Under the pieces are notes generated by a model, which saw only the letters and a list, made by a program, of their open reading frames with translations, ran no database searches and was not told where the DNA came from. Source: Mobula birostris (Eukaryota). Taken from it: DNA of 64,000 nucleotides. The stretch is from assembly GCF_030028105.1 (NCBI RefSeq), contig NC_092382.1, forward strand, positions 98,224,699 through 98,288,698, written 5' to 3'. Of the stretch, positions 1,371-35,996 are shown in pieces (the stretch's first letter is position 1; each line of letters begins with the position of its first letter). Position numbers and translations under genes: made by a program.

Positions 1371-1382
1371 TACGGTCTGGTG

Positions 1383-1396
1383 CTGCCACCTAGTGG
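1383..1396 (-). promoter_or_regulatory. CTCF-binding motif CCACTAGGTGGCAG, 35 bp behind a V RSS nonamer
   Basis: Exact match to the CCASYAGRKGGCRS consensus. Confidence 0.75.
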
Positions 1397-1431
1397 TACA
1401 ACGTGAAGCTCACTGCGCTTGGCTGGAAGGT

Positions 1432-1645
1432 TTTTTTTGCAGTGGGAGACTCGTTATCTGAAGTTCTGTGCCGTACTACAAGCGCAGTAGTAGACGGCAG
1501 AGTGGGAGGCCGATGCGTGTCCCAGTTCCAGTTTGAACAGAGTGCTGCTGGGTCTTGCCGCCGTGTAGGAATCGGATGTGTAGTTTTCAACCGAACCTTG
1601 TCCAACAGGATAGAAGACAGCATCTATTGTCCGGTCCCATCGCAA
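1432..1645 (-). pseudogene. TCR V segment (family B, 'CACS'), 5'-damaged, with 23-RSS
   Basis: Translation ...FYPVGQGSVENYTSDSYTAARPSSTLFKLELGHASASHSAVYYCACS. Heptamer CACAGAA 1470-1464, 23-nt spacer, nonamer GCAAAAAAA 1440-1432. FR1, WYRQ and leader not recognisable. Confidence 0.8.
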
Positions 1646-1799
1646 CTCCTTCCTCTTTCTACCCCATCACAGTTGAATCGGGTAATGGATATCATAGCGA
1701 GTAGGGTATAATAAGAGATCCTTTTAATTCCTCACGTCACCCTGTCATCCTTTTATGGGCAGAGGCCGCCGACAGCTGATCATCAGAGCACCCTGTCCT

Positions 1800-2270
1800 G
1801 GAGCAGACGGTCAATTTGCCCCCAGGTGTGGCTTATCTTTAAAAATGCTCCTTCTCCCCGGGGTGAGTACTTTGGAGAATCTGTTGGTGTTCCCGTACCT
1901 CTGCGTTTAACGGGGTGGAAATACGAGCCCCCATGCCCAACCCTACTCCATTCCTCAGCCTATGAAGGACTCTTCATTTCATGTGCCATGTGTTTCTCGT
2001 CACGTTATCGGTCGCACTCAAAAGTGACGATCCACCCGTGCTGAAGATCGGTGAGAAGACTGCACATAAGGAAGGATGGAGAGGGAAGATCGGTGCACGG
2101 ATTATCTCTTCCCATTTGAATGCTTAACGGAGAACATGAAAAGTTGTACCACTGCCCCTTCTTTCACTGATTTGCCGCTACGGCGCGCACGACAGATCAT
2201 AGACCCAACCCACACTATGATTGACAGGAGTCGTGTTTCCTGTTTTGCTTACAGCAGCGAGTACTCTAAC
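1800..2270 (-). pseudogene. Highly degenerate V-like relic (family X) with its own CCAAT/ETS-type promoter
   Basis: Block repeated at 2990-3470, 11260-11640 and (promoter only) 8050-8185. Frameshifted remnants such as Q..P....G..VTFEC and NRFS....FLKISH. Many stops. Confidence 0.45.
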
Positions 2271-2603
2271 GCTGCCCCTTCACTCTGAAGGTCACCTTCT
2301 GGCCGGCAGTTCCGGAGAAAGCCGGCGTCTGGAGGATGGTCACTGAGGTTGTGTCTGGAAATAAGACACGGGGGGGAGGCAGAACGTGTTGAATGAAAAC
2401 GGTGTCGCCAGTCAATGGGAAAGGCGAGAAAGAGTGTGCATTGAGGGAAGCAAAGAGGATGATGGAGGTCGGAAAATCTCTAGAGGCAATGGGAATTTAC
2501 GGGGTACGATAGAACGAGAGGAAGGCAGAGATGGAAGAAAAATAATATTTGTTAATTTTCACTCACAGTGCAATTCGAGAATGAAGTGCAGAAACAGAAA
2601 CAT
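2271..2603 (-). pseudogene. TCR V (family A) with an internal deletion: leader + FR1 joined directly to the RSS spacer
   Basis: Leader 2567-2603 (MFLFLHFILELH, GTGAGT donor). AG acceptor before 2354, TTSVTILQTPAFSGTAGQKVT, then TCAGAGTGAAGGGGCAGC (spacer of paralogous RSSs). Heptamer and nonamer both missing. Confidence 0.85.
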
Positions 2604-2693
2604 CCATCTTGAAGGGCTATTTGTCTCAGTCATGATAGTGCGAGCAGCAGAGAAATAATCGATTCACTTCAGGCCCCGATTGTTACTAATACC

Positions 2694-2736
2694 AGTGACG
2701 TAGGTGTGTTACGCAAGCAAAGATTGGCCACGCCCC
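2694..2736. promoter_or_regulatory. V promoter module: CRE-like AGTGACGTAG + CCAAT box + CACGCCCC GC box
   Basis: Motifs at 2694-2703, 2723-2727 and 2729-2736, ~90-130 bp upstream of the leader ATG. Conserved in paralogues. Confidence 0.65.
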
Positions 2737-2989
2737 TTCCATGCTCCAACCCGTTCCGCGGGGTGTGCTGATTCCTCTCGAACATGTTGACCACACTACA
2801 CACTCTCTCTGTTGCTCTTCCCGCCTTTCACTGTCTCTTTCTTCATCTCCCCTCGGTTTATTTAAGCTCCCAATTCTCTTAAATTTCTGAAAGCTACACA
2901 ACAGGTGAAAGAAGACGGGAATACTTCACCTCCATTTCAATGAAGCCAATAGTCTGTAATAATTAGGGCCACATGATTATCCTTATGAA

Positions 2990-3470
2990 ACATCATGGGT
3001 TCCGTACAGAGCAGGTGTGGACCACCTTCGAAGACCATTCCTCTCCCTGGTGTGATCACTATGGAGAATCTGTTGGCGTTCTTGTACCTCTGCCTTTTCT
3101 GTGATAGATCTGGGAGCCCCATGCGCATCTCCCCTCCATCACACAGCCCTTGGAGGACTCTTCAGTTCAGGAGTTCATGATCGACGTGTTTCTCGTCACA
3201 TTATCGGTCGCACTCAAAAGTGACGAGAAAACCCGTACTGAAGATCGGCGAGAAGATTGCACATAAGGAAGGATGAGTGGGAAGATCGGTGCCCGGTTTC
3301 TCTTCACCCATCTGAATGCTTCAGTGGAGGACGTGAACAGCTGTACCACCGCCCCTTCTTTCACTGATTCGCCGCTACGGCGCGCACGACTGAATGATAG
3401 ACCCACCGCCACCATATGATTGGCATGAGTCGTGTTTCCTGTTTCGCTGACAGAAGAGAACTCTCTGACG
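2990..3470 (-). pseudogene. Degenerate V-like relic (family X), second copy
   Basis: Paralogous to 1800-2270 and lies immediately behind the RSS of the V at 3515. Confidence 0.45.
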
Positions 3471-3475
3471 GTGAG

Positions 3476-4155
3476 AGTTTTTGTTCGGCTGCCCCGTCAC
3501 TCTGAGCCGCCGTGAACACTCTAGGCGCAGAAATACACGGCCTCCGCATTCGCCTCCAGTTTGTCGGACTTCAGGAAGAACTCGTTGCTCTAGGGTCTCT
3601 CCACCGTAAAACCGCCGACCAATCCTTCTGGCCTAACATGTTCAGCTGTCGACAAGTAAAACATGTTTTCCGGACCCTTTCCCGGGTATTGTCGGTGCCA
3701 GTACTATTCGTTACGTGCACTGGTGCTATCCTCCACTGTGCAATTCAGGGTCACCTTCTGGCCGGCAGTTCCGGCGAAAGCCGGCGTCTGGTGGATTGTC
3801 ACCGAGGTCGCGTCTGGAAAAAAGAGACGGGCTTGGCTGAACGGGGAAAGGGGAAGCAGGGACGGGGAGCAATCGGGATGGGGATAAACAGGGTGCACTG
3901 AAGGAAGCAAACAAGATGACTGTGGTAGGGGACATTTCTAGAGGAGATCGGAATTTAATGGCGGCGGCACAGGCCTGATCGTCTGCGGATGTGAGGGTTC
4001 GTAAATAAATAACGAATGAGTCCGAGAGAACGGGAGGGGAAAGCAAGTGGAACGAACGTGAAAGGAAGACACAAGTGGAGAATGAAAAAAATAATAATAT
4101 TTGGGAACTTTCACTCACGGCGGAAGGCGAGGATGAATTGCAGAAACAGAAACAT
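3476..4155 (-). pseudogene. TCR beta-like V pseudogene (family A, TRBV30-like)
   Basis: Leader 4119-4155 (MFLFLQFILAFR), V exon 3515-3813: ATSVTIHQTPAFAGTAGQKVTLNCTVEDS..*YWHRQYPGKGPENMFY..GFTVERP*SNEFFLKSDKLEANAEAVYFCA*. Three in-frame TAG stops. RSS CACGGCG(3514-3508)-23-ACAAAAACT(3484-3476). Confidence 0.92.
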
Positions 4156-4246
4156 CTTCCTTGGAGGGTTTACTCTCTGAGTGGTGAAAGTGGTGCGGGC
4201 GGCAGAGACGAATTCATTCACTTCCACCCGGTTTGTTACATAACCC

Positions 4247-4290
4247 AGTGACGCAGGTGGATTTGAGGACGTAGCAATTGGACACGCCCC
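4247..4290. promoter_or_regulatory. V promoter module (AGTGACGCAG, ATTGG, CACGCCCC)
   Basis: Same layout as 2694-2736, upstream of leader ATG 4155. Confidence 0.6.
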
Positions 4291-4412
4291 TTCCATCAAC
4301 CCGATTCGTGGGGTGTTCTGCTTCCGGTCTAGAAACTTGGCCACACAACCGACTCGCTCTGTCTCTGTCCCCTTCCCACCCTCTCCCTTTATTCCTCTCC
4401 CCGTTTAGATCA

Positions 4413-4414
<2 letters not shown>

Positions 4415-4466
<52 letters not shown>
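4415..4466. repeat. (GT)n microsatellite
   Basis: Direct reading. Confidence 0.95.
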
Positions 4467-4468
<2 letters not shown>

Positions 4469-4722
4469 CGGAAATCTACACAAACCGGTGAAAGACGGCG
4501 GATCACAATTCACGTTCTGTCGATAAACGGACCGCACACTGTACCATCTGAAACACTTTGTATCCTGCAAGGATCAGTCTCCGCAGAAAATCTCTCTCTT
4601 TCTCAGGCTTTCTTTCTCTCTATCGATGTCCTTCCTTCCACCTCTGGCTCTTAGCGCTTGTTGCGACCCTGTCGAAAGTGAAGGTCACCTTACGCAAACA
4701 ATTTGCTGCCTTTAATCGTTTT

Positions 4723-4736
4723 CCGCCCCCTAGTGG
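4723..4736 (-). promoter_or_regulatory. CTCF motif CCACTAGGGGGCGG behind a degenerate V end
   Basis: Consensus match, same orientation as the other copies. Confidence 0.7.
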
Positions 4737-4779
4737 TAGCAGGCTGAGCCTTCACATGTCGCTCAGCCTCCAATCGAGC

Positions 4780-5327
4780 TCAATAGCAGCGAGTTGGCGA
4801 GAGCAGGCCTAGAAGGAAGAGCAGATTTTCCTCATGTATCTAACCTAAAGGATATGTGCCCCTGCACATCTTGATGCTCTTACCAGGCTCCAGGCTAAAA
4901 TAATTTTTATTACAAACTGCTATTCTGTGATACTCTCCTTGGTAGACAGACCATGCATGAATCAATTCAACTCTTTCCTGTCAGGGTCGGAAAGCTGGAA
5001 TCTGGTGGATCGTCACCGGGGTCACATCTGAAGAAGAGAGTGGGAGTGAAAAGAGGTGAGCATGTGGAATGCGAGAACGACGGTGTAGAGAAGGGGAAGG
5101 ATTGAAGCCGGGGTATTTTCTGGTGGCGGTCAGTATGGAGAGTTTCCGACGAAGAAAAATCAGAGGGAGAATGGAAATGGGGGGAGAAAAGCGCAGATTG
5201 AGACAGAAAAGGCACAGGACGAGAGGAAGCGAGGACTACCCTAGGGTAAAGAGAGGAAGAAGTTTTGGCAAAGTTTTCCCTCACAGTGGAAGGAGAAGGA
5301 AACGATCACGTGCAAAAGCAGCAACAT
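4780..5327 (-). pseudogene. Chimeric V pseudogene: family-A leader/FR1 fused to the 3' half of a different degenerate V (family E)
   Basis: Leader 5285-5327 (MLLLLHVIVSFSFH), acceptor before 5027, VTPVTIHQIPAF. At ~4985 it switches to sequence paralogous to 9850-10030. Confidence 0.7.
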
Positions 5328-5610
5328 CTCCCCTGGAGGTTTATTCCGTCCCAAGTGAAACTGTTGTGTCCAGGAGCAATGAATCCACTCACTTCAGTCC
5401 CGCTTGTCATGTAACTCAGTGACTTAATTGGGCATTGGTGATACGGATGGCCACGCCCCCTGCTTCTTTTGGCCAATCAGAATCGAGGCATGCGGAGTTA
5501 TAATTTGCCATGTTATCATTGCACCTTCTTGACTTACCAAATCCGTCTCCCATCGATAGACAAGTGTTGATTGACTCGCTGCATTCTCTTCTTCCTTATC
5601 TGTCTTTCTT

Positions 5611-5654
<44 letters not shown>

Positions 5655-5744
5655 TATGCTGACCATGGTGGATTTCAATATGGAAGGAAACGTTGAAATC
5701 GAATGGAACACGGACAGCAGAAGCTGGCAGTTTATTGTTCCTGT

Positions 5745-5887
5745 CAGGTGCCTGGAGTTGGGCGAAGAATGAATCGATGAACTGGCCAACGGAGATCCCG
5801 TATTCCGGTGTTATCGATTGGAAAAGTGCTCTGAGTGATAATTAGTACAGAGAGAGCAGAGTGCAGGGTCGAAGCTGTTGGCCCAGG
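5745..5887 (-). pseudogene. Degenerate V-like relic (family D), cut by an assembly gap
   Basis: Paralogous to 14720-14890, which reads PGEKLRTC..LYK*SLRALF.SI..NGEIP. Confidence 0.4.
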
Positions 5888-6039
5888 NNNNNNNNNNNNN
5901 NNNNNNNNNNNNNNNNNNNNNNNNNNNNNNNNNNNNNNNNNNNNNNNNNNNNNNNNNNNNNNNNNNNNNNNNNNNNNNNNNNNNNNNNNNNNNNNNNNNN
6001 NNNNNNNNNNNNNNNNNNNNNNNNNNNNNNNNNNNNNNN
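5888..6039. other. Assembly gap (N run)
   Basis: Ns. Confidence 1.
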
Positions 6040-6221
6040 CTACTAATGCTCACACCTCTCATAACTTTCATATCGGTGTATCACTTTATTTATTTATCTT
6101 GATATGTATCTGAGTATTTATGTCTGAATTAACAGATCTCATTACGCAAGTTATGATCGATGATTTGCTTTATTTGTCCCATCCACATGGAACGTCAAAG
6201 ACCATCACGTTTTTGTCTGTA

Positions 6222-6354
6222 TAGATAGATCGATAGACAGTGAGATAGGTAGATAGATAGATAGATAGTTTGATTGATTGATTGATTGATTGATAGATAG
6301 ACAGACAGGCAGTTAGATAGACAGATAGATGTGCAGTTAGATAGATAGATAGAT
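6222..6354. repeat. (GATA)n/(GATT)n microsatellite
   Basis: Direct reading. A paralogous tract lies at ~15220-15340. Confidence 0.9.
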
Positions 6355-6649
6355 AATCCAAAATGACTGACTATAAACGTTTAATCATAGAACTCTATTC
6401 TCGTTCTTGTTCTGCTCGCCCGAAACACATCCCAGCTCTATAAAGGCTCCAATGGATGAAGTCGATGTTGTCAAGTGTTTCCCACGTCGCACAGTCTACC
6501 TGTGACTCAGCCTTCACTTTGATCCTCTGTGATTATCAATGGATCAGAGATAATTAAAGAAAGCTGAAACACGCGAAGGCGTGCAGTGCAGGGAAAGGTG
6601 TATGAAAGGCACGGTCCTGTGCTTCGGAGCTGTGAAACGCAATCTGCTA

Positions 6650-6663
6650 CTGCCCCCTAGTGG
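6650..6663 (-). promoter_or_regulatory. CTCF motif CCACTAGGGGGCAG, 39 bp behind the RSS nonamer
   Basis: Perfect consensus match. Confidence 0.8.
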
Positions 6664-6702
6664 TGCGAATCTGCTTACGAAGCTCCCAGCTACAGGGCAG
6701 AA

Positions 6703-6865
6703 GGTTGATGTCACACCAGATTCGGCTTGTCTCGCTCTGTGCACTAATACCAGTACAGAAGAAAACATCGAAGTGGGAGGGCGAGGCGATTTTCACTTCC
6801 AGTTTGAGCAGTGTGCTGTTCGTTCTCGTGGCGTGTAGGACTCGGTCGTGTAATTCGTGGCGAAC
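6703..6865 (-). pseudogene. 3' remnant of a family-B V with 23-RSS
   Basis: NYTTESYT..NSTLLKLEVKIASPSHFDVFFCTGIS (frameshifted). CACAGAG(6741-6735)-23-ACATCAACC(6711-6703). The 5' part is replaced by LINE sequence. Confidence 0.8.
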
Positions 6866-6929
6866 ATCAGCAAGCTAAATTTAAGGGGACCCCGACCCGG
6901 ACCATAACAGTCTCCTTCTGTAGCCATCG

Positions 6930-7410
6930 TGTTTCCTTAAATGTGTCTGTCCTTTCTGCTGTCCGCTAATTTGACCAGAAAGCCTTCAATTCCGTCATCC
7001 AAATCATTGAAGGACAACTGATAAAGAACTGTTCCCAAGGCTTTCAGCACTAGTCATTTGTAGCCAAATAGAGAAAGTTCTCTTTATTCTCACTCTTTTC
7101 CTCCTACCAATCACTCAATGCTCTATCAACACGAGTCTCGTTCATGTAATGCCATGGGCCGATGATAAACATCTTCCTGTGTGGCACCTTGTCCAATGCT
7201 TTCTGAAAATCCAAGTACACGGCATCCACGATTCTCCTTTGTCAATGCGGGTTATTTATTGAAAGAAGACCACCAGATTTGTCAGACAGGCTTTTCATTG
7301 CAACACACCATATTGACAGCCACCTATGAATGTGCCTCCAAGTACACCGAAACCACATCCTTTACCATCGATTCCAATATCTTCCCAGCCACTGAGGTCA
7401 GAGTAACTGC
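6930..7410 (-). mobile_element. CR1-type LINE RT fragments
   Basis: Degenerate RT-coding text (reverse complement of ..VDAVYLDFQKAFDKVPH.., ..NDLDDGIEGFLVK..). Boundaries approximate. Confidence 0.75.
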
Positions 7411-8187
7411 CCTATAATAAATGGGATTAGGTTACAACCAGCATTGAACATATAACTTTTGATGGACCAGGACAGTACGGGTTGTTCTGTCGTCGATCTT
7501 GCACCGACATTATACCATGCTCAAAGATTACTCTAACTCTTTCGTAAAACGTTAGTCCTTCATTTATTTCTATCACCGTAATGATATGGGCCTTGAGTTT
7601 GGAAATTGGATTGTCTTAAATAGAACAGGGAACATAAGACCGTGACACATAGGAGCAGAATATGACATTGTGCTTGCGGCGCTTTGGCATGTTTCGCGTG
7701 TTTTCCAGGTTTCCTGCATCTATTTAAAACCCCGAGGTCGGCTGACACCCCCAAAAACTGTCACCTCCAGCGATCGGTGAACGCGTAGATCAATATCCCG
7801 CTGTTCCTCCAAAGTACGCCGTGTTCTGCCCTTCACGCTGTGTGCTGTACCCTTGTTAACCTATCTCTCCCCGTCTCTTCACAATCCCCATTATCCAGCC
7901 CTCTCCTGTCTTCGTACACCGTGAACACTCTGTCGCCACCATTCACAGTGTGTGTGTCCTACCCTTGTATACCGAGGCCCATCTTGTCCCTCGACACTCC
8001 CCACCATGAACAGTGTGTGTCTTCATCCATGTGATTGCTTAATAAGGGGAAGAAATCGCTCCGCCCCTTCTTTCACTGATTGGTTGTTACGGCGCAGCGC
8101 CTGACCGAGAGACCCTCCTCCCACCCGGAGATTGACAGACGTCGCGTTTCCGGTTCAGCTGCCAACAGCGACGCTGCTGACAGTGAG

Positions 8188-8841
8188 AGTTTTTGTACAG
8201 CTCCCCCGTCACTCTGAGCCGCAGAAATACACGACCGACGGATTAGCTTCCAGTTTGTCGGATTTCAGGAAGAATTCGTTGGTCTGCGGTCTCTCCGCCG
8301 TGAAACCGGCGACCAATTCTTTTGGGTAAACGGATTTAGCCATCGTTGAGTAAAAGATGTTCTCCGGACCCTTTGCCGGGTATTGTCGGTACCAGTACAA
8401 CCTGTCAGTAGCACTCCTGATACCGTCCACTGTGCAATGCAGGGTCACGTTCCAGCCGGGAGATCCGGAGAAAGCCGGCGTCTGGTGGATCGTCACTGGG
8501 GTCGTGTCTGCAGAAGAGAATGGCAGGGCAGCAGAGGGAGGTGAATTTACTGGAAAGATGTAGAATTACTGATGGCGAAAACGAGCGTGTACCGAAGAAA
8601 AGTACTATTAGGAGGTTTGAAGGTGGAGCTTGTGGCGAGGCGATCGGAATTGAGAACAGGCGGAAGAGAGAAGACCGGGAGGGTGTAGAAATTCACAGAG
8701 GCAAGCACACAATGACCGGGAACGTTAATGGTGGAGAGGAAATTTAGGGTTACGAGAAAGGAAGGGAGGGAGACAAACAGAAAGAGTATGCAAATTTCCC
8801 TCACGGTGGAAATAGACGATCAGCTGCAGAGACAGGGTCAT
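8188..8841 (-). pseudogene. Family-A V with intact leader and open frame but RSS heptamer deleted
   Basis: Leader 8805-8841 (MTLSLQLIVYFH). V exon 8220-8507 is open: TTPVTIHQTPAFSGSPGWNVTLHC..LYWYRQYPAKGPENIFYS..GFTAERPQTNEFFLKSDKLEANPSVVYFC. Cys104+G abuts a full 23-nt spacer (8219-8197) and ACAAAAACT (8196-8188). Confidence 0.9.
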
Positions 8842-9163
8842 AAATCATGGATATTTACTCTCCCACTATTGAAAATGGTGTTTCGTGGAGCAGAGAATCC
8901 ACTCACTTGCGGGTGAGGCAGAACGGGTAAAGAAAACGGAGACGCGGGTCAACGGGGGAGGGGAAAAAAAGGGTGCCTCGAAGGAAGCAGAGAGGTGACC
9001 GAAGTCGGGAATTTTTTTACAGGAGATCAGAATTTAGAGGCGGAAAGTGCGCGGACGCGAGGGCTGGTAACTCAACAATAATGAGTCCAAGACGACAACT
9101 GAAGGGAATGTGACAGGAGGACAGAAGTGAAGAAAATATATATATTTGGGAACGTTCACTTAC

Positions 9164-9203
9164 AGCGGAAGCCGAGGATGAACTGCAGAAACAGAAACAT
9201 CAT
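9164..9203 (-). pseudogene. Orphan family-A leader exon (promoter + leader + partial intron, no V exon)
   Basis: MMFLFLQFILGFR with GTAAGT donor and CRE-like AGTGACGTAG at 9292-9301. The intron runs into the promoter of the 8.8-kb leader at ~8910. Confidence 0.8.
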
Positions 9204-9793
9204 CCTTGGAGGGTTCACTCTCTAAGTGATGAACGTTGTGCGTGAAGCAGAGACGAATCCGCTCACTTCAATCCAGATCGTTGCATATCTCAGTGACGTA
9301 GGTGGATTTACGGAAATAACTACTGGCCCCACCCCTTCCACTCTCCAACCCGATTCGACGGATGTGCTGGTCTCGCTCTACCATGTTGACCAAACAACAC
9401 ACTCTCTCATTTGCTCATCCCGCCCTCCCTCTCTCGTTCGTCACCACACCCCACCCCACGTTATCTTACTGTGTGCGATTTATTTAAGCTTCCAAAATCA
9501 TTGCAGTTTCCGAGATCTACATGACAGGTGCAAGAAGAGGGGCCACATGTGGCCTTCCTTTCGCTGAAACCAAGATTCTCTTGTGATGATGGCCACTCGA
9601 TTAAGCTTATAATTTGCCCTGAGCAGCATTCGGCATGAAATCTCTCTCTTTCCCTCTGTGCCTCAGCCTCTACCTCTGACTCTTAACACTAGATTCAACT
9701 TAGTCGAAGAAAGAAAAAATCACCTCGAAACAAATAATGTGTCCCTTTTCAAACCCTTCGAAATATCCAGCCTAAATTTAACCACAGTGCTTG

Positions 9794-9807
9794 CCGCCCT
9801 CTAGTGA
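9794..9807 (-). promoter_or_regulatory. CTCF-like motif TCACTAGAGGGCGG behind a degenerate V end
   Basis: Near-consensus, same orientation, in a context paralogous to 4723. Confidence 0.6.
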
Positions 9808-9840
9808 TGGCAGCCTGTGCCTTCACTGCTCGCTGGATTG

Positions 9841-10033
9841 CATAGTGGTTGACAGAGCAGAACTATAAGGAAGACAATATTCTTCTCCAGTATCTAACCT
9901 CAAGGATGTGTGTCCATGCGCATCCTCGTGCTTTTAGGTTCCAGGCTGAAATCATTTGTCTTACTACCTTCTTCTCTGTATTACTCTGCTTTACAGGTGT
10001 ACTGAACATGAATCAAATTTAACTCTTTCCTGG
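9841..10033 (-). pseudogene. Degenerate V relic (family E) with heptamer-like CACTATG and no nonamer
   Basis: PGKS*..FMFST.....ISA.....ILEV....SS.*FCSVN then CACTATG (9847-9841). Confidence 0.5.
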
Positions 10034-10289
10034 GTTCAGTGAGCTGAATCCCTCCGCAAGCAAAGGCATGAAGTGCGAAGGTGCGATCTGGCGTATACCT
10101 TCGTCAACTGAGCTGTCACGCCGAATATAGGGCAACCAGCCGCTGACTGACAGCAGACATTTCCTGCCTTTAACGGCGGAATAATTCTCGCTCAGCTACT
10201 TTGTCACCTCTCCAATTTCAGCTTATCCTTTTTTCAGGGGACAAAAAGGTCTTACAATACTCCAAACGATGCCTCACCGGTATTTTATA

Positions 10290-10680
10290 AGTTCACAACA
10301 TTGCATTGTTGTTTTTACATTCTAGTTGTTTGGAAATGAATGTTAGCATCTCATTTCCCTTCCTCAACTCTGGCTTAACCGACACATTCACCTTTGAGGA
10401 TCCTTTCTGGGGACTCCCAAGTCTCTTTCGACTTCAGGTTTTTGAATTTGTTCTCCATCTAGAAAATCGCCAAGGCATTTATTTATTCTACCGAAGTGCA
10501 TGACAATACAATTCCTGAGACTGCCATTTGTTCCCTTTTCTACTAATATGTCTAAGTCAGTCTGCGGCCACTGTGATTCCTTAAAAGAACCTGCTCCTCC
10601 ACCTATCTTCGTTCGGTCTGTAAACCTGGCCAGAAAACCATCAATTCCGTCATCCAAATCATTGACATTCAACGCGCCAA
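10290..10680 (-). mobile_element. CR1-type LINE RT fragment
   Basis: ORF 10388-10672 NVNDLDDGIDGFLARFTDRTKIGG...VERDLGV. Confidence 0.8.
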
Positions 10681-11259
10681 CCTTATCACTTGCTCAAATA
10701 TCAATGTAACTATTTCGTAAAGACTTAGTCCTTCCTTTTTCTTTCACGGGGATGCTTTGGGTCAAGTGTTTGGAAATTGGATTGTCTGACGTAGAACATG
10801 GAGCATTAGACCCTGACTCATATGAGCAGAATGTGGCATTCTGCGTGCGTCGCGTTTGCATGTTTTGTGGCTTCCGTTTAAAATCCCCAGATCCGCCGAC
10901 GCCCCCAAGTCCTGTGAAGGACGTCGCTTTCAGTGATTGGTGAACATGTACATCAATATCGCTTTGTTCCTCCAAACTACGCGGTGTTCCACCCTTCACA
11001 GTGTGTGCCCTACCCTTGTTATCCTATGGCTCCCCGTCTCTTAACAATCCCAACTATCCGGGCCTCTCCTATCTCTGTACATCAAAACCCCTCTGCCCCT
11101 CCACAGTCCCCACCAGACACAGTGTGTGCCCTACCCTGTACAGCGAGGTCCCTCTGTCCCTCGACACCTCCCCACCGTCCATGGTTTGTGTCCTACCCCG
11201 TATACTGAGGTCCCTCCGTTCCTCAACGTTCCCCACCATTTACGGCGTGTTTGTCAAAC

Positions 11260-11640
11260 ACTTATGCCGCGTTCTTGAACAGTCCGGTATTTCTCGTATT
11301 CTGTGTTTTCACCAGCAGACAAAGAAAATTACGAGCGGCAAATTGATCTTCGGGACGGAATATTGTTGGTGCACTCAAACGTACCGATGCTCCCAGACCG
11401 AAGATATGCGGGGAGGCAGCGCATAAGAAGTAAGAATGGAATGGAAATGTGAGTATGCGAATTGTCTTCACACAACTGAATGCTTCAGAAGAGGAGGAAA
11501 TTAAAAATTACGGTACAAGAGCAGTGCCTCTTGCTTCACTGATTGGACGCAACAGCGCCTACGACGTAGAACTACCTCCAACCATATGATTGACAGGAGT
11601 CGTGTTTCCTGTTTTGCTGACAGCAGCGAGTCTTCTGACG
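11260..11640 (-). pseudogene. Degenerate V-like relic (family X), third copy
   Basis: Promoter block shared with the 2.2, 3.4 and 8.1 kb copies. GTFEC remnant. Confidence 0.4.
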
Positions 11641-11645
11641 GTGAG

Positions 11646-12294
11646 AGTGTCTGTTCAGCTGTCCCGTCACTCTGAGCCGCCGTGATCACTCCAGGCGCAG
11701 AAATACACGGCCGACGAATTCGCCCCCAGTTTGTCCGACTTCAGGGAGATCTCGTTGCTTTCGATCTCTTCGCCGTAAAACCGTCGACCAATCCGTCTGG
11801 CCTGACGTACTTAGCTGCGGACCCTTTCCTGGGTATTGTCGGTACCCGTACAAGTAGTTAGTAGCACTGGTACTATCCTCTACTTACAACGCAAGGTCAC
11901 CTTCTGGCCGGGAGTTCCAGAGACAGCCGGAGTCTGGTGGATCGTCACCGAGGTCGCGTCTGGAAAAAGAGACGGGGGTGGCAAAATGCTTTGAGTGAAC
12001 AGGGAGACCCTGGTCAATAGGGAAGAGGAAAAGGAGGGAGCATTGAGAGAAGAGAGAAGAACTGAAGTCGGGAGAGCTCAAGAGGTGGACGGAATTCAGA
12101 GGGGACGGCTGAGGAAAGATCGTGTGAGGATGCTACGATTCGTAACTAAATATAGAAAGATTCGGAGACGACTGGAGTGTAAAGCAATTGAGGGGGATCA
12201 GAAAGGAAGAAAGAAGCAAAGAAATGAAAAGAATAATTTTTGTTCAAATTCACTCACAGTGGAAGGCGAGGATGACCTGCAGAACCAGAAACAT
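11646..12294 (-). pseudogene. Family-A V pseudogene (frameshifts, degenerate nonamer)
   Basis: Leader 12258-12294 (MFLVLQVILAFH). V exon 11685-11959 is frameshifted after Cys23 and ends VYFCAWSD. RSS CACGGCG(11684-11678)-23-ACAGACACT. CRE-like AGTGACGTAG at 12386-12395. Confidence 0.9.
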
Positions 12295-13853
12295 CTTCCT
12301 TGGCGGGTTTATTCTCTCAGCGATGAAAGCGCTGCGTGCATCAGAGACGAATCCATTCACTTCATCCCCGCTTGTTACGTGTCCCAGTGACGTAGGTGGA
12401 TTTGCGGAAGTAGCGATCAGCAACGCCCCTTCTATGAGACCGCCCCGATTCGAGGGATGTGTTGCTTCCGTTCCAGAGGGTTTGACCACCCATCACTCTC
12501 GCTCTCTCTCCCTATCACTCCCTCCCTGTTTCTCCCTCTCCCCGCTATATCTCATTCTGTACTGTTTTTATATATACTCCAAATGTTTTTGCCGTATATG
12601 CCTCCCAGTCTTTAGTTTTTCACCAACCATCTCCTCCCTTTGGTTCCACTCTTCGTCCCCTTTCCTCTGTGGTCCCCTCTGCTCTCATCTCGGAAATCTT
12701 CTTCCACCGTCTATGTCTTCCATGTACTGTACCGCCTTCCAGCTTCCCATAAAATGTGTCCTCCCCAATACGCACTCAACTGGCCTGAACTATCACCGAC
12801 CGTCTTGTGGTCCTTCTCATTTGGTACTTTATTATTCTATATTCCCTTCCAGTTCCGCTGGGATGTCTCGGTACTAAACATTGACTCGTTATTCCCCTCC
12901 ATAGATATACTAGACGTATTGAGTCTCCCAACGCCTCTTGTTTGTAGGCCACAGGACACAGAGTGCACGTCTCTCATCCACCGCTTCCCATAGTCAACGC
13001 TCGGGTTTAGCTCCGCTTCGTTCTTCTCTGAACCAGTTGGAACGAATGCATACGTTCGATCCAAATTAGCCGAATGCCCTCCTAACTCTCTCCCCAGCGG
13101 AATTCTCTCTTTCTCCCACTCTCTCTCTCACTGAAGATTATTCTCTTCCCCTACATCTTCATGAACGCCTCTCAGTCACAAATAAGCTGAAGTTGTTTGC
13201 CGGGCGCATTGACTATCTCCTTCTATGTCTGTCTCGCTATCACTCCAACCCTCTCCCTATCTACTGTTCTCTCTCTCTCTCTGTCTCTCTCTCTCTCTCT
13301 GTCCATCATCTAGCTAAAAATATATCTTTAAATCTATCTGTCTGCCTTTCTTCCTGTCTGTCTATTTATTAATCCATCTATCTAGTTATATTCATGTCTA
13401 GATATTACCTATTTATTTTATGTTTAGTACTTTGTTTACAGAATGACTTCGTCTTGTCAGGCAGCCTCAACGAAACATTAGGGAGAAGGGACGTTACGTC
13501 AGAGAAAGGCTTGACTCAGGCACAGCTGGCGTATTGCCCAGAATGATGCACAAAGCGATGAATGTGCAGGATGTAGGTGTAGGGAAACTGCATATAGTTG
13601 GAAGTCTCAACCCAGTTGGCCTTACTCGGAAGCTCTGATCAAAACGGTCATGTAACGAAGAACCACCATGCAGTCTGAGTACACACCAGTCTGATCATCG
13701 GAGGAAGGCTTTCACCGAAACAAAAAAAACAAAACGGGTGCAAAGATATCTGTGTAGAATCGCTACAGCCACTTTAATCCCTAACAAGACAAATGCATGA
13801 CAAGAGCAGGTGCGATATCGTCGCCCTTTGTTTCTCTCAGTGGCAGCATCGCA

Positions 13854-13867
13854 GCGCCATCTGTCGG
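13854..13867 (-). promoter_or_regulatory. CTCF-like motif CCGACAGATGGCGC, 41 bp behind the RSS of the intact V
   Basis: One mismatch to consensus. Same orientation and spacing as the other RSS-linked motifs. Confidence 0.55.
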
Positions 13868-13908
13868 ACAGGATCACACCCACACTTATATTAACATCAA
13901 GACGGTGA

Positions 13909-13947
13909 GGTTTTTGTTCATCTCCTCCGTCTGACTCAGTCGCTGTG
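13909..13947 (-). other. 23-RSS of the intact V: CACAGCG-23 nt-ACAAAAACC
   Basis: Heptamer 13947-13941, spacer 13940-13918, perfect nonamer 13917-13909. Confidence 0.95.
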
Positions 13948-14245
13948 TCACGCCAGGCACAGAAGTACACGGCTGATGAATTCGCCTCCAAGGCGACGGA
14001 GATCAGCCTGAAGATGTAGCTGCTCGGTCTCTCTGCGGTGAAGCCAGACAGCGGCCCCTTCGGTTGCACGTTACCGGTAAACGTAGAGTAGAACAAGTTC
14101 TCGAGCCCCTGTCCCGGGTACTGTCTGTACCAGAACATTCTATCAGCCGCGTTGCTGCTCCCCTCGACAGTACAGTTCAGAGTCACAGCCCGGCCGGTGG
14201 GACTGGAGAAAGCCGGAATCTGGCGGATCGTCACCGGGGTCACGT
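13948..14245 (-). CDS. TRBV: T-cell receptor beta variable segment, V exon (apparently functional, TRBV30-like)
   Basis: AG acceptor. Open frame VTPVTIRQIPAFSSPTGRAVTLNCTVEGSSNAADRMFWYRQYPGQGLENLFYSTFTGNVQPKGPLSGFTAERPSSYIFRLISVALEANSSAVYFCAWR with Cys23/Trp41/Cys104. The TI.Q..., CTVEG, LFYS and CAW motifs recall mammalian TRBV30. Chain assignment is by recognition, not search. Confidence 0.88.
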
Positions 14246-14500
14246 CTGAATAAGAGAGTGGGAGTGAAAAGAGGTGAGTATGCGGACGGCGAGAACGACG
14301 GTGTAGAGGAGGGGGAGGATTGAAGTCGGGGTATTTTTGGGCGACGATCGGTACGAAGACGTCCCGACGAAGAAAGATCAGTGTGAGGATGGAAATGTGC
14401 GGAGAAAAGCGCAGAATAAGACAGAAAAGGCACAGGACAAGAGGAAGCGAGGATTACCCGAGGGAAAAGAGAGGAAAAAGTGGTAACAAATTTCCCTCAC

Positions 14501-14537
14501 AGTGGAAGGAGACGATCAGTTGGAGAAACAGCAACAT
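14501..14537 (-). CDS. TRBV: Leader exon of the intact V (MLLFLQLIVSFH, phase-1 donor GTGAGG)
   Basis: 37-nt exon that splices in frame (T+AC) to the V exon at 14245. Confidence 0.85.
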
Positions 14538-14719
14538 CTCCCCTGGAGGTTTATTCCGTCCAATGTGAAACTGTTGTGTCCAGGAGCATTGAACCCACAC
14601 ACTTCAGTCACGCTTGTCATGTAACTCACTGAGCTAAATGGTCATTGGTGCTCCGGATGGCCACTCCCTCTGCTTCTTTTCGCCAATCAGATTCGAGGCA
14701 TACACAGTTATACTTTTCC

Positions 14720-14890
14720 GATGGCCATTATTCCTGTCTTGTGCTTGGAATTGGGTGAAGAAAGGGTCGATCAACTGGCCACGGAATTTCCCCATTCCGG
14801 TGTTCCGGTGTTATCGATCGGAAAAGTGCTCGGAGTGATTATTTGTACAGAGAGAGCAAACCGCAGGTTCGAAGCTTTTCGCCCGGGGCT
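14720..14890 (-). pseudogene. Degenerate V-like relic (family D)
   Basis: PGEKLRTCGLLSLYK*SLRALFRSITPEHRNGEIP. Paralogue at 5745-5887. Confidence 0.4.
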
Positions 14891-15231
14891 CTCACTTCTA
14901 TCGCTCTCTTTCTCTCTCTGTCCCTCTGTCCCTCCCCCCTTCCTCCTATCTCCCTCTCTCTCTTCCCCCACTCTCTTCCCTCCTCTCTCACCCCCTCCCT
15001 GACTATAGATCCTGCTGATTTCCTCAGTGATCATAACTCCATTATCGGTGTATATCTTTATTTATTTATCTTGATATGCATCTGCGTATTTCTGTCTGAA
15101 TAGACCGATCTCATTTCGCAAATTATGATCGATGATTTACTTTATTTGCCCCATCTACATGGAACGTCAATGACCAGCACGATTCTCTCTATTCAGATAG
15201 ATCTATAGACAGTGAGATACATAGATAGATC

Positions 15232-15273
<42 letters not shown>

Positions 15274-15692
15274 CAGACAGACATGCAGTTAGATAGATAG
15301 ATAAGTAGATAGATGCACAGTTAGATGGATAGATAGATAGTCCAACATGACTGAATATAACCATTTAATCACAGAACTCTAGTTTCGTTCTTGTTCTGCT
15401 CGGCCGTAGCACATCCCAGCTCTATAAAAGCTCCGATGGATGAGGTCGAGGTTGGGACGTTTTTCCCTCGCCGCACAGTCTACCTGTGACTCAGCTTTCA
15501 CCTTGGTCCTTTCTGATGATCAATGGATCAGATAAAAATCTAATTAATGAAAGCTGAAACACGCGAAGGCGTGCAGTGCAGGGAAAGGTGTATGAAAGGC
15601 ACGGTCCTGTACCTCGGAGCTGAGCAATACCGGACCAGAGTAAAATGGATCCTATGCCAGATACAAAATGAGTTGTGAAACGCAATCTGCTA

Positions 15693-15706
15693 CTGCCCCC
15701 TAGTGT
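15693..15706 (-). promoter_or_regulatory. CTCF motif ACACTAGGGGGCAG, 30 bp behind the RSS nonamer
   Basis: One mismatch to consensus. Paralogous to 6650-6663. Confidence 0.7.
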
Positions 15707-15736
15707 TGCAAAGCAGCTTATAAACCTCTCAGCGAA

Positions 15737-16175
15737 GGTTTATGTCACACCAGACTCAGCCTGTCTAGCTCTGTGCGCTAATACAAGTGCAAAAGAAAAC
15801 GTCGGAGTGGGAGGGCGAGACGCCTTTGACTTGCTGTTTGAACAGTGTGCTGCTAGTTCTCGTGGCAGTGCAGGGATCGGTTGTATAATTCGTGACGATG
15901 CCTTGCCCAGCAGAGAGGATAAGAGCTTCTACTGCCCGACAGAGTCTCTGTCTGTACCATAACATAGTGCTATTGCCGGTATTCAGCAGCATCCACGTGA
16001 CGTTGACTGACTCCCCAACTCCAATTGACAAGGAGGGAGGCATCTGTTCCACGTGCCCGACCAGAACCCCTGCAAGATGGAAATTATATCAGACTCTAAC
16101 TTTCTCTCAATAGTCACCCAGGTATTCTACAAAATTAGAAAGAAGGTACGCGCGCCCCTAAAAATTCCCGGCCAT
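15737..16175 (-). pseudogene. Family-B V pseudogene (stop in leader, Cys23 replaced by Trp)
   Basis: Leader 16118-16175 has TAG at codon 6. V exon 15776-16069 is open: VEQMPPSLSIGVGESVNVTWMLL..WYRQR..FFCTCIS. RSS CACAGAG(15775-15769)-23-ACATAAACC(15745-15737). Confidence 0.85.
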
Positions 16176-16447
16176 CCTTATATTAAGTACAAATAATTTA
16201 AGCACTTCAGTTGTAAATCTTGCTGTGGCTCAAAGCGGGGTTGCCAAATTTCTTCAGCTTCGTAAGAAATTCGAGGCGGCCACTGTTTTTATTTTGCGTG
16301 AAGTGTTTCTGAATTACTTCATTTAACCTTGCCTTTTTCCCTGTCTAATTTCCTGATATTACCTACTGGATTGGTTGGATAGAAAGAATCAAAAGGCAAT
16401 TGCAGTGTGATGCTGGACGCGACCCGGACAGTGAAGCTCAATGTGCA

Positions 16448-16461
16448 GCGACCCCTAGTGG
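16448..16461 (-). promoter_or_regulatory. CTCF-like motif CCACTAGGGGTCGC, 42 bp behind a stranded nonamer
   Basis: One mismatch to consensus. Nonamer ACAAAAACT at 16512-16504. Confidence 0.7.
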
Positions 16462-16525
16462 TGGGAAATAGTAGCTTCTGAGCCTTCAGCGATTGTGCAG
16501 AACAGTTTTTGTCAGAGGCGGCTCG

Positions 16526-16709
16526 CCCTCCAAGGATGATGTTTCTGTTTCTGCAGTTCATCCTCGGCTTCCGCTGTAAGTGAACGTTCCCAAATATATA
16601 TATTTTCTTCACTTCTGCCCTCCTGTCACATTCCCTTCAGTTGTCGTCTTGGACTCATTATTGTTGAGTTACTAGCCCTCGCGTCCGCGCACTTGCCGCC
16701 TCTAAATTC
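16526..16709 (+). repeat. 184-bp inverted copy of the 9030-9213 leader/intron segment inserted in an RSS spacer
   Basis: Manual alignment gives the same length and 3 mismatches. It carries ATGATGTTTCTG...GTAAGT on the plus strand. Confidence 0.92.
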
Positions 16710-16714
16710 CTGTG

Positions 16715-17146
16715 CGCTACTACAGGCGCAGAAATAGTCGGCCGAGTGAGAGTGCGAGGCGTTCTTTACTTCCAGTTGAAAGAAAGTACTGCTGGATCTT
16801 CTTGCCGTGTAGGATTCCGACGTGTAATTCCTGACTATATCTTTCCCATTAGAATGGAAAAGAGCTTCTATTGCTCCGTCCGCTCGCTGTCTGTACCAGA
16901 ACATATGATCATAGTCCGAATTCAGCAGCGTGCATTGGACGGTGATTGACTCCCCAAATCCAACTGACGGGGAAGGGGGCGACTGCTTCACGTATGCGGC
17001 CAGAATCCCTGTAAGGGAGAAATTGCATTAGAGCCTAACTTATCTCAACAAATGGTAGCCCGTTCTCTGAACCTGAGTTACCTTCCCCAGAACCATTGTT
17101 ATTCTGACTTATGCGGGATAAATGCCACGATCAGCGGAACACAATA
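16715..17146 (-). pseudogene. Family-B V with open V exon, mutated leader donor (ATAAGT) and split RSS
   Basis: V exon 16715-17008: ILAAYVKQSPPSPSVGFGESITVQCTLLNSDYDHMFWYRQRADGAIEALFHSNGKDIVRNYTSESYTARRSSSTFFQLEVKNASHSHSADYFCACSS. Heptamer CACAGGA 16714-16708. Putative leader YCVPLIVAFIP ends at 17113; its start is uncertain. Confidence 0.85.
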
Positions 17147-19335: not shown

Positions 19336-19589
19336 AGGTCACCAAAAGGATGATCTCCCCATTAATTACATATGTCGAAAAGACATAGATGTTTGCGAGA
19401 TATTAGCATTTGTACAGATGCATCCGTAGAGCAAACTTTTACAGATGCACCGGTATAACATTTGCGCGTTGCTGCGTGCCGTTCGAGTAGGACAATGTGC
19501 AGCGATACACAGAGTACTGCTGCCCCCACGTGGCGAAAATTCCGTTCTGCACCTCTTGGTGAATAGGATCAAGGTATTTCCTGGTTTGA

Positions 19590-35082: not shown

Positions 35083-35996
35083 TCACCGAGGATTAATGCA
35101 ATCCTGACAACGCCGAATGAACTTTGCCATGAGGCGTAAGGGTGATTTCACCGTCTCCTTCAGCTGCACCCTGAACCTGGCCTGGACCACGGCGTAAAGG
35201 AACGTGTTGGTGCAGCAGCTGAGGAGCTGCAGCATGTAGCCCAGCTCCCGCAGAGAACTCGGGGGAATCGAATCAAAGCTCTCCCATATGGAATACACCG
35301 TCAGCAGCGCCCACAGCAGGATGAAATTCCCCGACATAACCAGCAGTAAGAGGAGGGCTTGCCTGCGGTTCTTCAACTCCGGGTCGGCGGGCATTTCGCC
35401 ATCCCGCGAACCACGGAGTCTCCTCCGGGCTCGGCTGGCGAGGAAGACGTGTCTGATGGTTAAACTATTGAGCAGGAGTATCAGGACAAAGGGGAATATT
35501 GGGGTGAGGAGGAAATGAATCAGTCGAAATGTTGCCAGCTGAGAAATGGAAAATGAACGGTTACTGGTATAGCAGAGCAAGGACCGATCTAATGCGGAAT
35601 ATGACTCATCGAGCATAAAGTACCAGAATATGTTCTTTACGCAGCTCAGCACAGTCATTGTCCCCAGAACCAGAGCCGCCGCTCTCCCGGTGCAGTATCT
35701 TCGTTTCAGCTCCTGAAAACAAATGGCGACAAACCGATCAAAGGTGAAAGTGACGGTGAACCAGACAGAACAGTCCGTGGCGGCGTAGAACACAACGGCG
35801 TGGATATTACACACGGGAGCACGATGTGACCAGTAGAGAAACTCCATTGGCACGTTAGTCATCGGAATCTTGTTCAATACCAGATCGAAGAGAACGACGA
35901 GCTGATCCGCTGCTACCATGGCAACCAGGTACCTTGTGACGCCTTTGGAGAGACCGCACTTTCCCCGCGACAGGATGACGATTGTCACAACGTTCA
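35083..35996 (-). CDS. GPR139-like GPCR copy B, exon 2
   Basis: AG acceptor, 304 codons to stop. In-frame 4-aa deletion in ECL3 relative to A and C. Protein is 364 aa. Confidence 0.93.

What the first reader, a model, noticed from the sequence alone, without database searches (positions are those of the whole stretch)
1383..16461. Co-oriented CTCF motifs 30-42 bp behind V recombination signals
Seen: seven CTCF-consensus or near-consensus motifs, all on the minus strand (the V transcription direction), at 1383, 4723, 6650, 9794, 13854, 15693 and 16448. Where a nonamer is readable the gaps are 35, 39, 41, 30 and 42 bp. They occur behind three different V families, including the single intact V, and persist where the V and even the nonamer have decayed. 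Established: RSS-adjacent, uniformly oriented CTCF sites at mouse proximal Igh V genes impede cohesin loop extrusion and promote RAG-scanning access. Inference: the same architecture may operate in a chondrichthyan TCR locus, making loop-extrusion-guided V choice as old as jawed-vertebrate adaptive immunity. Pseudogene-linked sites may be retained as structural anchors. Part of the repetition reflects tandem duplication.
Basis: partly seen in the sequence, partly recalled or inferred. Interest (0 to 1): 0.76.

Follow-up and report, generated by a model that had tools for sequence, protein, structure and literature searches.

The report
CTCF-type sites behind ray TCR-beta V signals
In a small, mostly dead outlying cluster of T-cell-receptor beta V genes of a manta-type ray, same-direction binding motifs for the genome-folding protein CTCF sit 30-42 bases past the recombination signals; this layout is known from mouse antigen-receptor genes, and nothing yet shows that CTCF binds here.

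Summary
The seven motifs are real. An eighth lies at 19518. All eight strong CTCF matches (15.9-21.4 bits) are on the minus strand and within the first 20 kb. About 0.5 are expected by chance in the whole window, and the 44 kb of receptor genes beyond has none. The spacings 35, 39, 41, 30 and 42 nt reproduce exactly.

I found two TCR-beta V families, not three. All four family-B Vs and the one intact family-A V (13959, which is transcribed and spliced) carry the motif. The sites at 4721 and 9792 have no recognisable V end or signal in front of them.

Anchored on the recombination signal, the family-B motif core is the best-kept non-coding stretch: 10 of 14 columns are invariant against 20 of 161 elsewhere. 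Whale-shark relatives carry a weaker motif 38 nt past the signal.

The best reading is an inherited V-signal-CTCF unit under selection, working as an oriented cohesin barrier as in mouse Tcrb and Igh. CTCF binding, the direction relative to D-J-C, and any anchor role for sites behind dead Vs are untested.

This scan already reported the same layout in at least ten other windows of this genome. This is one more instance.

The parts
1381..1399 (-). CTCF-type motif (19.7 bits; core 1383-1396 matches the consensus perfectly), 35 nt past the nonamer of the family-B V remnant
1432..1666 (-). Truncated family-B V remnant (about 1471-1666) with its 23-RSS (heptamer CACAGAA at 1464-1470, nonamer GCAAAAAAA at 1432-1440)
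3476..3811 (-). Family-A pseudogene V (two stop codons) with a 23-RSS at 3476-3514. It has no CTCF motif behind it (best 4.4 bits, a decayed remnant at 3404-3422)
4721..4739 (-). CTCF-type motif (21.4 bits, perfect core). There is no RSS or V end in front. It lies about 250 nt behind a truncated family-A V 5' piece (4990-5025)
5888..6039 (.). Assembly gap. Its flanks are collinear with the paralogous unit 14727-15031. It is not near any motif and was not filled
6648..6666 (-). CTCF-type motif (20.4 bits, perfect core), 39 nt past the nonamer
6703..6855 (-). Truncated family-B V remnant with a 23-RSS at 6703-6741 (CACAGAG / ACATCAACC)
8218..8502 (-). Family-A V with an open reading frame that has lost its heptamer and coding tip. 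It has no CTCF motif behind it (best 0.9 bits)
9792..9810 (-). CTCF-type motif (17.3 bits, 1 mismatch), paralogue of 4721. No V end or RSS lies in front
11691..11954 (-). Family-A pseudogene V with no CTCF motif behind it (best -0.8 bits)
13852..13870 (-). CTCF-type motif (15.9 bits, 2 core mismatches), 41 nt past the nonamer of the only intact V
13909..14594 (-). Intact family-A V. The 23-RSS is at 13909-13947 (CACAGCG / ACAAAAACC), the V exon at 13948-14245, the leader intron at 14246-14500 (GT..AG) and the leader exon starts at 14501. An RNA-like run shows the spliced form
15691..15709 (-). CTCF-type motif (16.4 bits, first core base C to A), 30 nt past the nonamer
15737..16052 (-). Family-B V with an open frame but the first conserved Cys replaced by Trp. 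The 23-RSS is at 15737-15775
16446..16464 (-). CTCF-type motif (19.7 bits, 1 core mismatch), 42 nt past nonamer ACAAAAACT (16504-16512)
16526..16709 (.). 184-nt inverted copy (98.4%) of 9030-9213, inserted between the heptamer (16711-16717) and nonamer of family-B V 16718-16991
16718..16991 (-). Family-B V exon with an intact reading frame whose RSS is split by the insertion
19518..19536 (-). Eighth co-oriented CTCF-type motif (15.6 bits) with no V beside it. It lies between the last V and the first receptor gene (21003-21977)

Best explanation
These are CTCF-binding elements inherited as part of the TCR-beta V-gene unit: V exon, 23-nt-spacer recombination signal, about 40 nt, then the CTCF site, all in the V direction.

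Shown: the motif's excess over chance, its single orientation, its position anchored on the signal, its conservation above the flanks in family B, its presence at the same place behind whale-shark relatives, and transcription of the one intact V.

Inferred: in developing T cells CTCF binds them and, because the motif is asymmetric, stalls cohesin arriving from the side the V genes point to. That would make each V a loop anchor or pause site which brings its signal close to the D-J recombination centre. This has been demonstrated for the CTCF site of the isolated mouse Trbv1 and for proximal mouse VH genes.

In this outlying and mostly dead cluster, the sites behind pseudogenes are most simply left over from when those Vs worked. 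One family-A subfamily has already lost the motif.
For: Excess and strand. Six matches with at most 1 mismatch, all on the minus strand, against 0.77 expected. Eight hits of 15 bits or more against 0.475 expected, with none in the 44 kb of receptor genes.

Position. Five of eight Vs with a readable 3' end have the motif 30-42 nt past the nonamer.

Conservation. In the alignment of the four family-B Vs, anchored on V and signal, the 14-nt core has mean pairwise identity 0.86. The spacer has 0.39, the nonamer-to-motif gap 0.47, the nonamer 0.57 and the DNA beyond 0.27. Ten of 14 core columns are invariant against 20 of 161 other non-coding columns (Fisher p = 3e-6). Three of the five variable core positions vary only within the consensus's own degeneracy (K, R, S).

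Old copies. Flanks of most motif pairs show no detectable similarity, and paralogues are 70-86% identical. Recent duplication therefore cannot explain the intact motifs.

Other species. Three of three whale-shark relatives have a same-strand motif of 11.5-12.5 bits exactly 38 nt past the nonamer. One sturgeon V family has it at 48 nt. Motifs run in the V direction in 10 of 10 cases in sturgeon, 4 of 4 in alligator and 5 of 7 in a mammal.

Literature. Mouse Tcrb has 18 V-associated sites, all convergent with the sites at the recombination centre, and the Trbv1 site is needed for its long-range recombination (PMC10772921). Proximal VH genes have sites directly behind their signals (10.1101/2020.01.01.891473). 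Signatures of CTCF-oriented loop extrusion exist in the little skate (10.64898/2026.10.19.759930).

Transcription. The intact V 13959 is spliced in an RNA-like run of the same organism.
Against: No occupancy or contact data exist for this animal.

Three family-A Vs lack the motif, and one of them still has an open reading frame, so a V can persist without it. The 4721/9792 pair shows no conservation above its flanks.

Seven of the eight Vs here cannot work, so present function in this cluster is doubtful.

Unchecked scan notes place a D-J cluster 2.1 Mb beyond the window's end. If the locus reads in the plus direction, these minus-strand Vs and motifs point away from it.

The whale-shark motifs are weaker. 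They carry G or A where the matrix strongly prefers C.
Confidence: 0.55

Rival explanations
1. The sites are relics. The motifs were functional parts of V units in the past, but in this outlying and decaying cluster they do nothing now. They survive only because too little time has passed since the Vs died.
For: Seven of eight Vs are dead or cannot recombine. Spacing has drifted to 30-42 nt through 9-nt deletions. Two motifs carry damaging changes: core position 1 at 15691 and position 11 at 16446. One family-A subfamily has lost the motif entirely. The 4721/9792 pair is no better conserved than its flanks. For the 6648/15691 pair (77.5% identity), 18 of 19 identical bases is not significant (about p = 0.05 by my arithmetic).
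Against: The two most wrecked family-B Vs (1457 and 6737, both truncated) have perfect consensus cores. The sites at 4721 and 9792 keep strong motifs although the signal and V end in front of them are gone. The intact, transcribed V keeps its motif.
Confidence: 0.25
2. The element acts locally on accessibility. Bound CTCF, placed a fixed distance of about 40 nt from the nonamer, keeps the recombination signal in nucleosome-free DNA so that RAG can cut it. Long-range looping is secondary.
For: The spacing is nearly fixed and shared between ray (39-42 nt in the better-kept copies) and whale shark (38 nt in 3 of 3). A pure loop anchor would not need spacing kept to the base pair. That nucleosomes block RAG cleavage and that CTCF phases nucleosomes are from my own knowledge, not checked here.
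Against: In sturgeon, alligator and a mammal the co-oriented motifs lie 110-650 nt or further from the signal. That fits orientation-dependent looping better than a local spacing rule. Uniform orientation is not needed for nucleosome exclusion.
Confidence: 0.12
3. The sequence is not a CTCF site. It could be a chance resemblance, a target of another zinc-finger protein, or a motif carried by a transposable element.
For: There are no binding data. A conserved extension (GATTG...TTCA) follows the core in both ray and whale shark, which could belong to another factor.
Against: Chance is excluded. The flanks match only V-unit paralogues and no dispersed repeat in the window. Variation within the core follows the CTCF consensus's degeneracy.
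Confidence: 0.05

Closest known systems
Mouse Tcrb V-associated CTCF-binding elements, especially the Trbv1 site (Allyn et al. 2024, PMC10772921)
   Same: The locus type is the same (TCR-beta). Sites lie among the V segments in a single orientation. An isolated V far from the main V array carries its own site; in the mouse, that site anchors loop extrusion and is needed for long-range recombination.
   Different: Here the motif sits 30-42 nt past the recombination signal. I did not establish where the mouse sites lie relative to the signal; in the one mammal sampled they were about 310 nt away or further. Binding, looping and direction relative to the recombination centre are untested. Most Vs here are dead.
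Mouse Igh proximal VH CTCF-binding elements directly behind the VH recombination signals (Jain et al. 2018, as cited in 10.1101/2020.01.01.891473)
   Same: The site lies immediately downstream of the V recombination signal, and all are in one orientation along the V direction.
   Different: It is a different locus and cell type. In Igh the sites act during linear RAG scanning. Mouse Tcrb also uses diffusion-based synapsis, so the scanning mechanism cannot simply be carried over.
The same layout in other windows of this genome (scan notes s1-145257, s1-145207, s1-145130, s1-145129 and others)
   Same: A co-oriented CTCF-type motif about 39-43 nt past TCR-beta V signals in the main V arrays, 1.1-1.56 Mb away on the same piece.
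   Different: This window holds a small outlying cluster set among receptor genes. It is mostly pseudogenes, has looser spacing, and one subfamily has lost the motif.

Membership tests
V-gene-associated CTCF-binding elements (mouse Igh proximal VH / Tcrb V type) | Sequence matches the CTCF core motif | tested here: met
   Three perfect and three one-mismatch matches to CCASYAGRKGGCRS. Eight matrix hits of 15.6-21.4 bits.
V-gene-associated CTCF-binding elements (mouse Igh proximal VH / Tcrb V type) | Lies directly downstream of a V recombination signal | tested here: met
   Five sites lie 30-42 nt past a nonamer. Three further sites (4721, 9792, 19518) have no signal in front, and three family-A Vs have no site.
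V-gene-associated CTCF-binding elements (mouse Igh proximal VH / Tcrb V type) | Single orientation across the V array | tested here: met
   Eight of eight on the V strand. These represent about five flank lineages, so the independent count is smaller.
V-gene-associated CTCF-binding elements (mouse Igh proximal VH / Tcrb V type) | Convergent with the CTCF sites that flank the D-J-C recombination centre | not testable with these tools
   The recombination centre lies outside the window. Two look-ups meant to place the window on its chromosome found nothing.
V-gene-associated CTCF-binding elements (mouse Igh proximal VH / Tcrb V type) | Occupied by CTCF and cohesin in lymphocyte precursors | not testable with these tools
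   No ChIP-type run was identified. The listed runs carry no library description.
V-gene-associated CTCF-binding elements (mouse Igh proximal VH / Tcrb V type) | Mutation changes use of the linked V | not testable with these tools
   Needs genetics or repertoire data.
V-gene-associated CTCF-binding elements (mouse Igh proximal VH / Tcrb V type) | Conserved above the surrounding non-coding DNA | tested here: met
   Family B: 10 of 14 invariant core columns against 20 of 161, p = 3e-6. Whale shark has it at the same position. Not met for the 4721/9792 pair.
CTCF sites spread by a transposable element (SINE-type expansion) | Motif embedded in a dispersed repeat found away from V units | tested here: not met
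   Self-comparison of the window matches the motif flanks only to V-unit paralogues. There are no copies in 20-64 kb.

The most novel reading that the evidence does not exclude
The CTCF sites behind dead V genes, together with the V-less site at 19518, are kept for their own sake. They would form an oriented multi-site barrier. That barrier either insulates the neighbouring receptor-gene array from the TCR-beta domain, or lets this outlying cluster act like mouse Trbv1, as an origin or end-point of megabase-range loop extrusion that delivers the one working V (13959) to a recombination centre about 2 Mb away.
Probability: 0.15. Interest if true: 0.7.

Novelty: new member of a known kind. Interest (0 to 1): 0.45.

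Why it matters
If CTCF binds these sites, then oriented cohesin barriers attached to V recombination signals already existed in the common ancestor of rays and sharks. Together with the co-oriented motifs in bony-vertebrate TCR-beta arrays, that would place them at the base of jawed vertebrates, so control of V choice by genome folding would be about as old as V(D)J recombination itself.

This window also offers a natural experiment. Dead Vs with perfect motifs, a live V with a moderate motif, and Vs that lost the motif lie side by side. CTCF mapping and repertoire data could show which of them still act. On its own the window adds little, because the scan has already reported the same layout in the main arrays of this genome.

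Tried and rejected
Chance was rejected by shuffles and simulations. Recent tandem duplication as the sole cause was rejected: paralogues are 70-86% identical and most motif flanks are unrelated. A transposable-element origin was rejected.

An ungapped comparison of all eight sites shows flanks at random-level identity (0.27-0.29) and the core at 0.72-0.73. I do not use this as evidence of selection, because the sites were chosen by their motif, which makes the test circular.

DNA could not be fetched for the cloudy catshark, sawfish and stingray relatives (file or gene range too large). The word-index protein search found one relative for family B and none for family A.

Two look-ups of the window's receptor-gene products, meant to place the window on its chromosome and settle the direction towards D-J-C, found nothing on record. 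Scan notes gave distances but no strands.

Three literature searches found no description of CTCF sites behind recombination signals in cartilaginous fish. That shows absence from this library only.

The reads laid from two other organisms list no difference inside 13852-13870, but the table was truncated, so I draw no conclusion about conservation between species from it.
Full report
WHAT THE WINDOW HOLDS

The first 17 kb carry a cluster of V gene segments, all on the minus strand. They fall into two families.

- Family B has copies at 1457, 6737, 15789 and 16728.
- Family A has copies at 3527, 8221, 11691 and 13959, plus pieces at 2288, 5000 and about 10040.

Both families are V-set domains. 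The best single-domain matches among solved structures are TCR beta chains. Family B's nearest named relatives are TCR beta chains of the smalltooth sawfish (53% identity) and the nurse shark (46%), and an unnamed whale-shark protein (53%). The recombination signals have 23-nt spacers, as V-beta signals do.

From 20 kb to 64 kb the window holds three intronless rhodopsin-type receptor genes on the minus strand (21003-21977, 35083-35997 and 51928-52902) and repeats. There is no V there.

Unchecked scan notes say three things. The V cluster continues about 16.7 kb before the window. The main TCR-beta V arrays lie 1.1-1.56 Mb beyond the window's end. A D-J cluster lies 2.13 Mb beyond it. If so, this is a small outlying V cluster set among receptor genes.

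THE ASSEMBLY GAP

The gap at 5888-6039 was tested first, as asked. Its sides, 5734-5887 and 6059-6863, align in the same order and orientation with 14727-14887 and 15031-15898 of a paralogous unit. That unit has 143 nt where the gap stands. No motif lies within 600 nt of the gap. I did not fill it.

CHECKING THE OBSERVATION

The tool's consensus scan (CCASYAGRKGGCRS, at most 1 mismatch) finds six matches, all on the minus strand, at 1383, 4723, 6650, 9794, 15693 and 16448. The expectation is 0.77, and none of 100 dinucleotide-preserving shuffles reaches six.

It gives eight hits of 15 bits or more, all on the minus strand and all in the first 20 kb. Simulations expect 0.475.

Measured from the last nonamer base to the first base of the 14-nt core, the gaps are 35, 39, 41, 30 and 42 nt, exactly as reported.

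The claim of a single intact V holds:

- 13959 has an open frame, both cysteines, the tryptophan and a good signal.
- 3527 and 11691 carry stop codons.
- 1457 and 6737 are truncated.
- 15789 has lost its first cysteine.
- 8221 has lost its heptamer.
- 16728 has its signal split by a 184-nt insertion.

Three points need correcting.

First, there are two V families, not three. The sites at 4721 and 9792 lie about 250 nt behind truncated 5' pieces of family-A Vs and have no V end or signal in front. Their flanks resemble the flank behind family-B V 16728.

The best scores there are 4.4, 0.9 and -0.8 bits. Aligning them with 13959 shows a decayed remnant at the homologous place.

Third, the site at 19518 has no V. 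It lies between the last V and the first receptor gene.

INHERITANCE OR SELECTION?

The paralogues are old, at 70-86% identity. Outside the 19-mer, only the pairs 6648/15691, 4721/9792, 4721/16446 and 15691/16446 have detectable flank similarity. The eight sites therefore represent about five lineages.

The non-circular test anchors on the V and its signal, not on the motif. In the four-way family-B alignment, the mean pairwise identities are as follows.

| Region | Mean pairwise identity |
|---|---|
| 14-nt motif core | 0.86 |
| Heptamer | 0.81 |
| V coding | 0.69 |
| Nonamer | 0.57 |
| Nonamer-to-motif gap | 0.47 |
| Spacer | 0.39 |
| DNA beyond the motif | 0.27 |

Ten of 14 core columns are invariant, against 20 of 161 other non-coding columns (Fisher p = 3e-6). 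Of the five variable core positions, three vary only within the consensus's own degeneracy.

The criterion is not met for 4721/9792, where 12 of 14 core bases match amid flanks of about 73% identity. For the 6648/15691 pair alone it is also not significant.

OTHER SPECIES

I fetched a whale-shark locus holding four family-B-like Vs. The three with readable signals each have a same-strand motif of 11.5-12.5 bits exactly 38 nt past the nonamer. The same short extension (GATTG...TTCA) follows the core as in the ray. The shark motifs are weaker because G or A replaces a strongly preferred C.

Results for four other TCR-beta V arrays were as follows.

| Species | Motifs of 12 bits or more in the V direction | Distance from the signal |
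|---|---|---|
| Sturgeon | 10 of 10 | 48, 110 or about 646 nt past a signal, or nearer the next V |
| Alligator | 4 of 4 | none near a signal |
| Mammal (Pyrenean desman) | 5 of 7 | two at about 311-317 nt |
| Halosaur (teleost) | one on each strand | only weak ones within 100 nt of a signal (8.3 bits or less) |

Co-orientation with the V genes therefore looks general. The placement 30-48 nt behind the signal appears in ray, shark and one sturgeon family.

EXPRESSION

One run of the same organism, probably RNA, has exact contigs on V 13959. One of them joins 14245 to 14501 and skips an intron with GT..AG ends on the V strand. The intact V is therefore transcribed and spliced. I could not see whether it is rearranged.

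Contigs from two other organisms join 16525 to 16710 without the 184-nt insertion.

MECHANISM

Established from the literature:

- Mouse Tcrb has 18 CTCF sites among its V segments, all convergent with the sites flanking D-J. The site at the isolated Trbv1 anchors loop extrusion and is needed for its long-range recombination, which proceeds partly by diffusion and not only by RAG scanning (PMC10772921).
- Proximal mouse VH genes have sites directly behind their signals, and these promote their use (10.1101/2020.01.01.891473).
- Signatures of CTCF-oriented loop extrusion have been reported in the little skate (10.64898/2026.10.19.759930).

Inferred: the ray motifs bind CTCF and stall cohesin arriving from the side the Vs point to, which brings the linked signal to the recombination centre.

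The near-fixed spacing shared by ray and shark also suggests a local role in keeping the signal free of nucleosomes. I rank that second.

In this cluster most Vs are dead, so many sites may be relics. Perfect motifs do persist behind the two most wrecked family-B Vs and at 4721, which leaves room for an independent anchoring or boundary role. That role is unproven.

The direction relative to D-J-C could not be determined. If the locus reads in the plus direction, as the order of the scan notes suggests, these Vs and motifs point away from D-J. That would imply inversional joining and non-convergent sites.

NOVELTY

The kind is known in mammals. I found no description for cartilaginous fish in three literature searches. 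This scan has already reported the same layout in at least ten other windows of this genome. This window is a further instance. Its added value is the contrast between live and dead Vs and its outlying position.

Noticed in passing
window 16526-16709 and 9030-9213: A 184-nt inverted copy (98.4% identity) of a family-A leader region is inserted between the heptamer and nonamer of family-B V 16728. Contigs from two other organisms join 16525 to 16710 with 12-16 other letters instead.
   Followed up: partly
window 8188-8229: Family-A V 8221 has an open reading frame but lacks 18 nt that its paralogues 3527 and 11691 have. The missing stretch removes the coding tip and the heptamer.
   Followed up: partly
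window 2274-2288: In the family-A copy at 2288, V codon about 20 is joined directly to the DNA that normally follows the RSS. Most of the V exon and the whole RSS are deleted (compare 3474-3748).
   Followed up: no
window 13948-14594: The intact V 13959 is transcribed. An RNA-like run of the same organism has exact contigs with the leader intron 14246-14500 (GT..AG) spliced out. Whether it is rearranged was not visible.
   Followed up: partly
window 6630-6647, 15673-15690, 16428-16445; L001 626-650: A short block (GATTG, a few bases, then TTCA) follows the CTCF core at the same distance in three of the four ray family-B copies and, for its GATTG part, in all three whale-shark copies. It may be an extended CTCF contact or a second factor's site.
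   Followed up: no
window 3330-3360, 8075-8110, 11540-11570, 2165-2200: About 110 nt past the RSS, the family-A copies that lack the CTCF motif share a well-kept CpG-rich block ending in a CCAAT-like AATCAGTGAA.
   Followed up: no
window 21003-21977, 35083-35997, 51928-52902: Three paralogous intronless rhodopsin-type receptor genes lie on the minus strand and have no strong CTCF motif among them. The V cluster is set into this array. Neither of the two 324-aa products looked up (21003-21977 and 51928-52902) is on record in the gene collection.
   Followed up: partly
window 303-1013 and 31405-32023: Two copies (92-94% identity, inverted) of a repeat encoding a GIY-YIG nuclease domain, probably a Penelope-like element. 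One lies just beside the V cluster.
   Followed up: no
L002 (sturgeon) 2795-29246: Ten of ten CTCF motifs of 12 bits or more in a 36-kb sturgeon TCR-beta V array run in the V direction, several at 18-21 bits. They sit at family-specific distances of 48, 110 or about 646 nt past the RSS.
   Followed up: partly
window 2564-2602, 5282-5320, 12255-12293, 14498-14536: Family-A leader exons and their splice donors, read on the opposite strand, score as 23-RSS-like sites (CACAGTG plus an A-rich nonamer). I treated them as false positives of the RSS scan.
   Followed up: no
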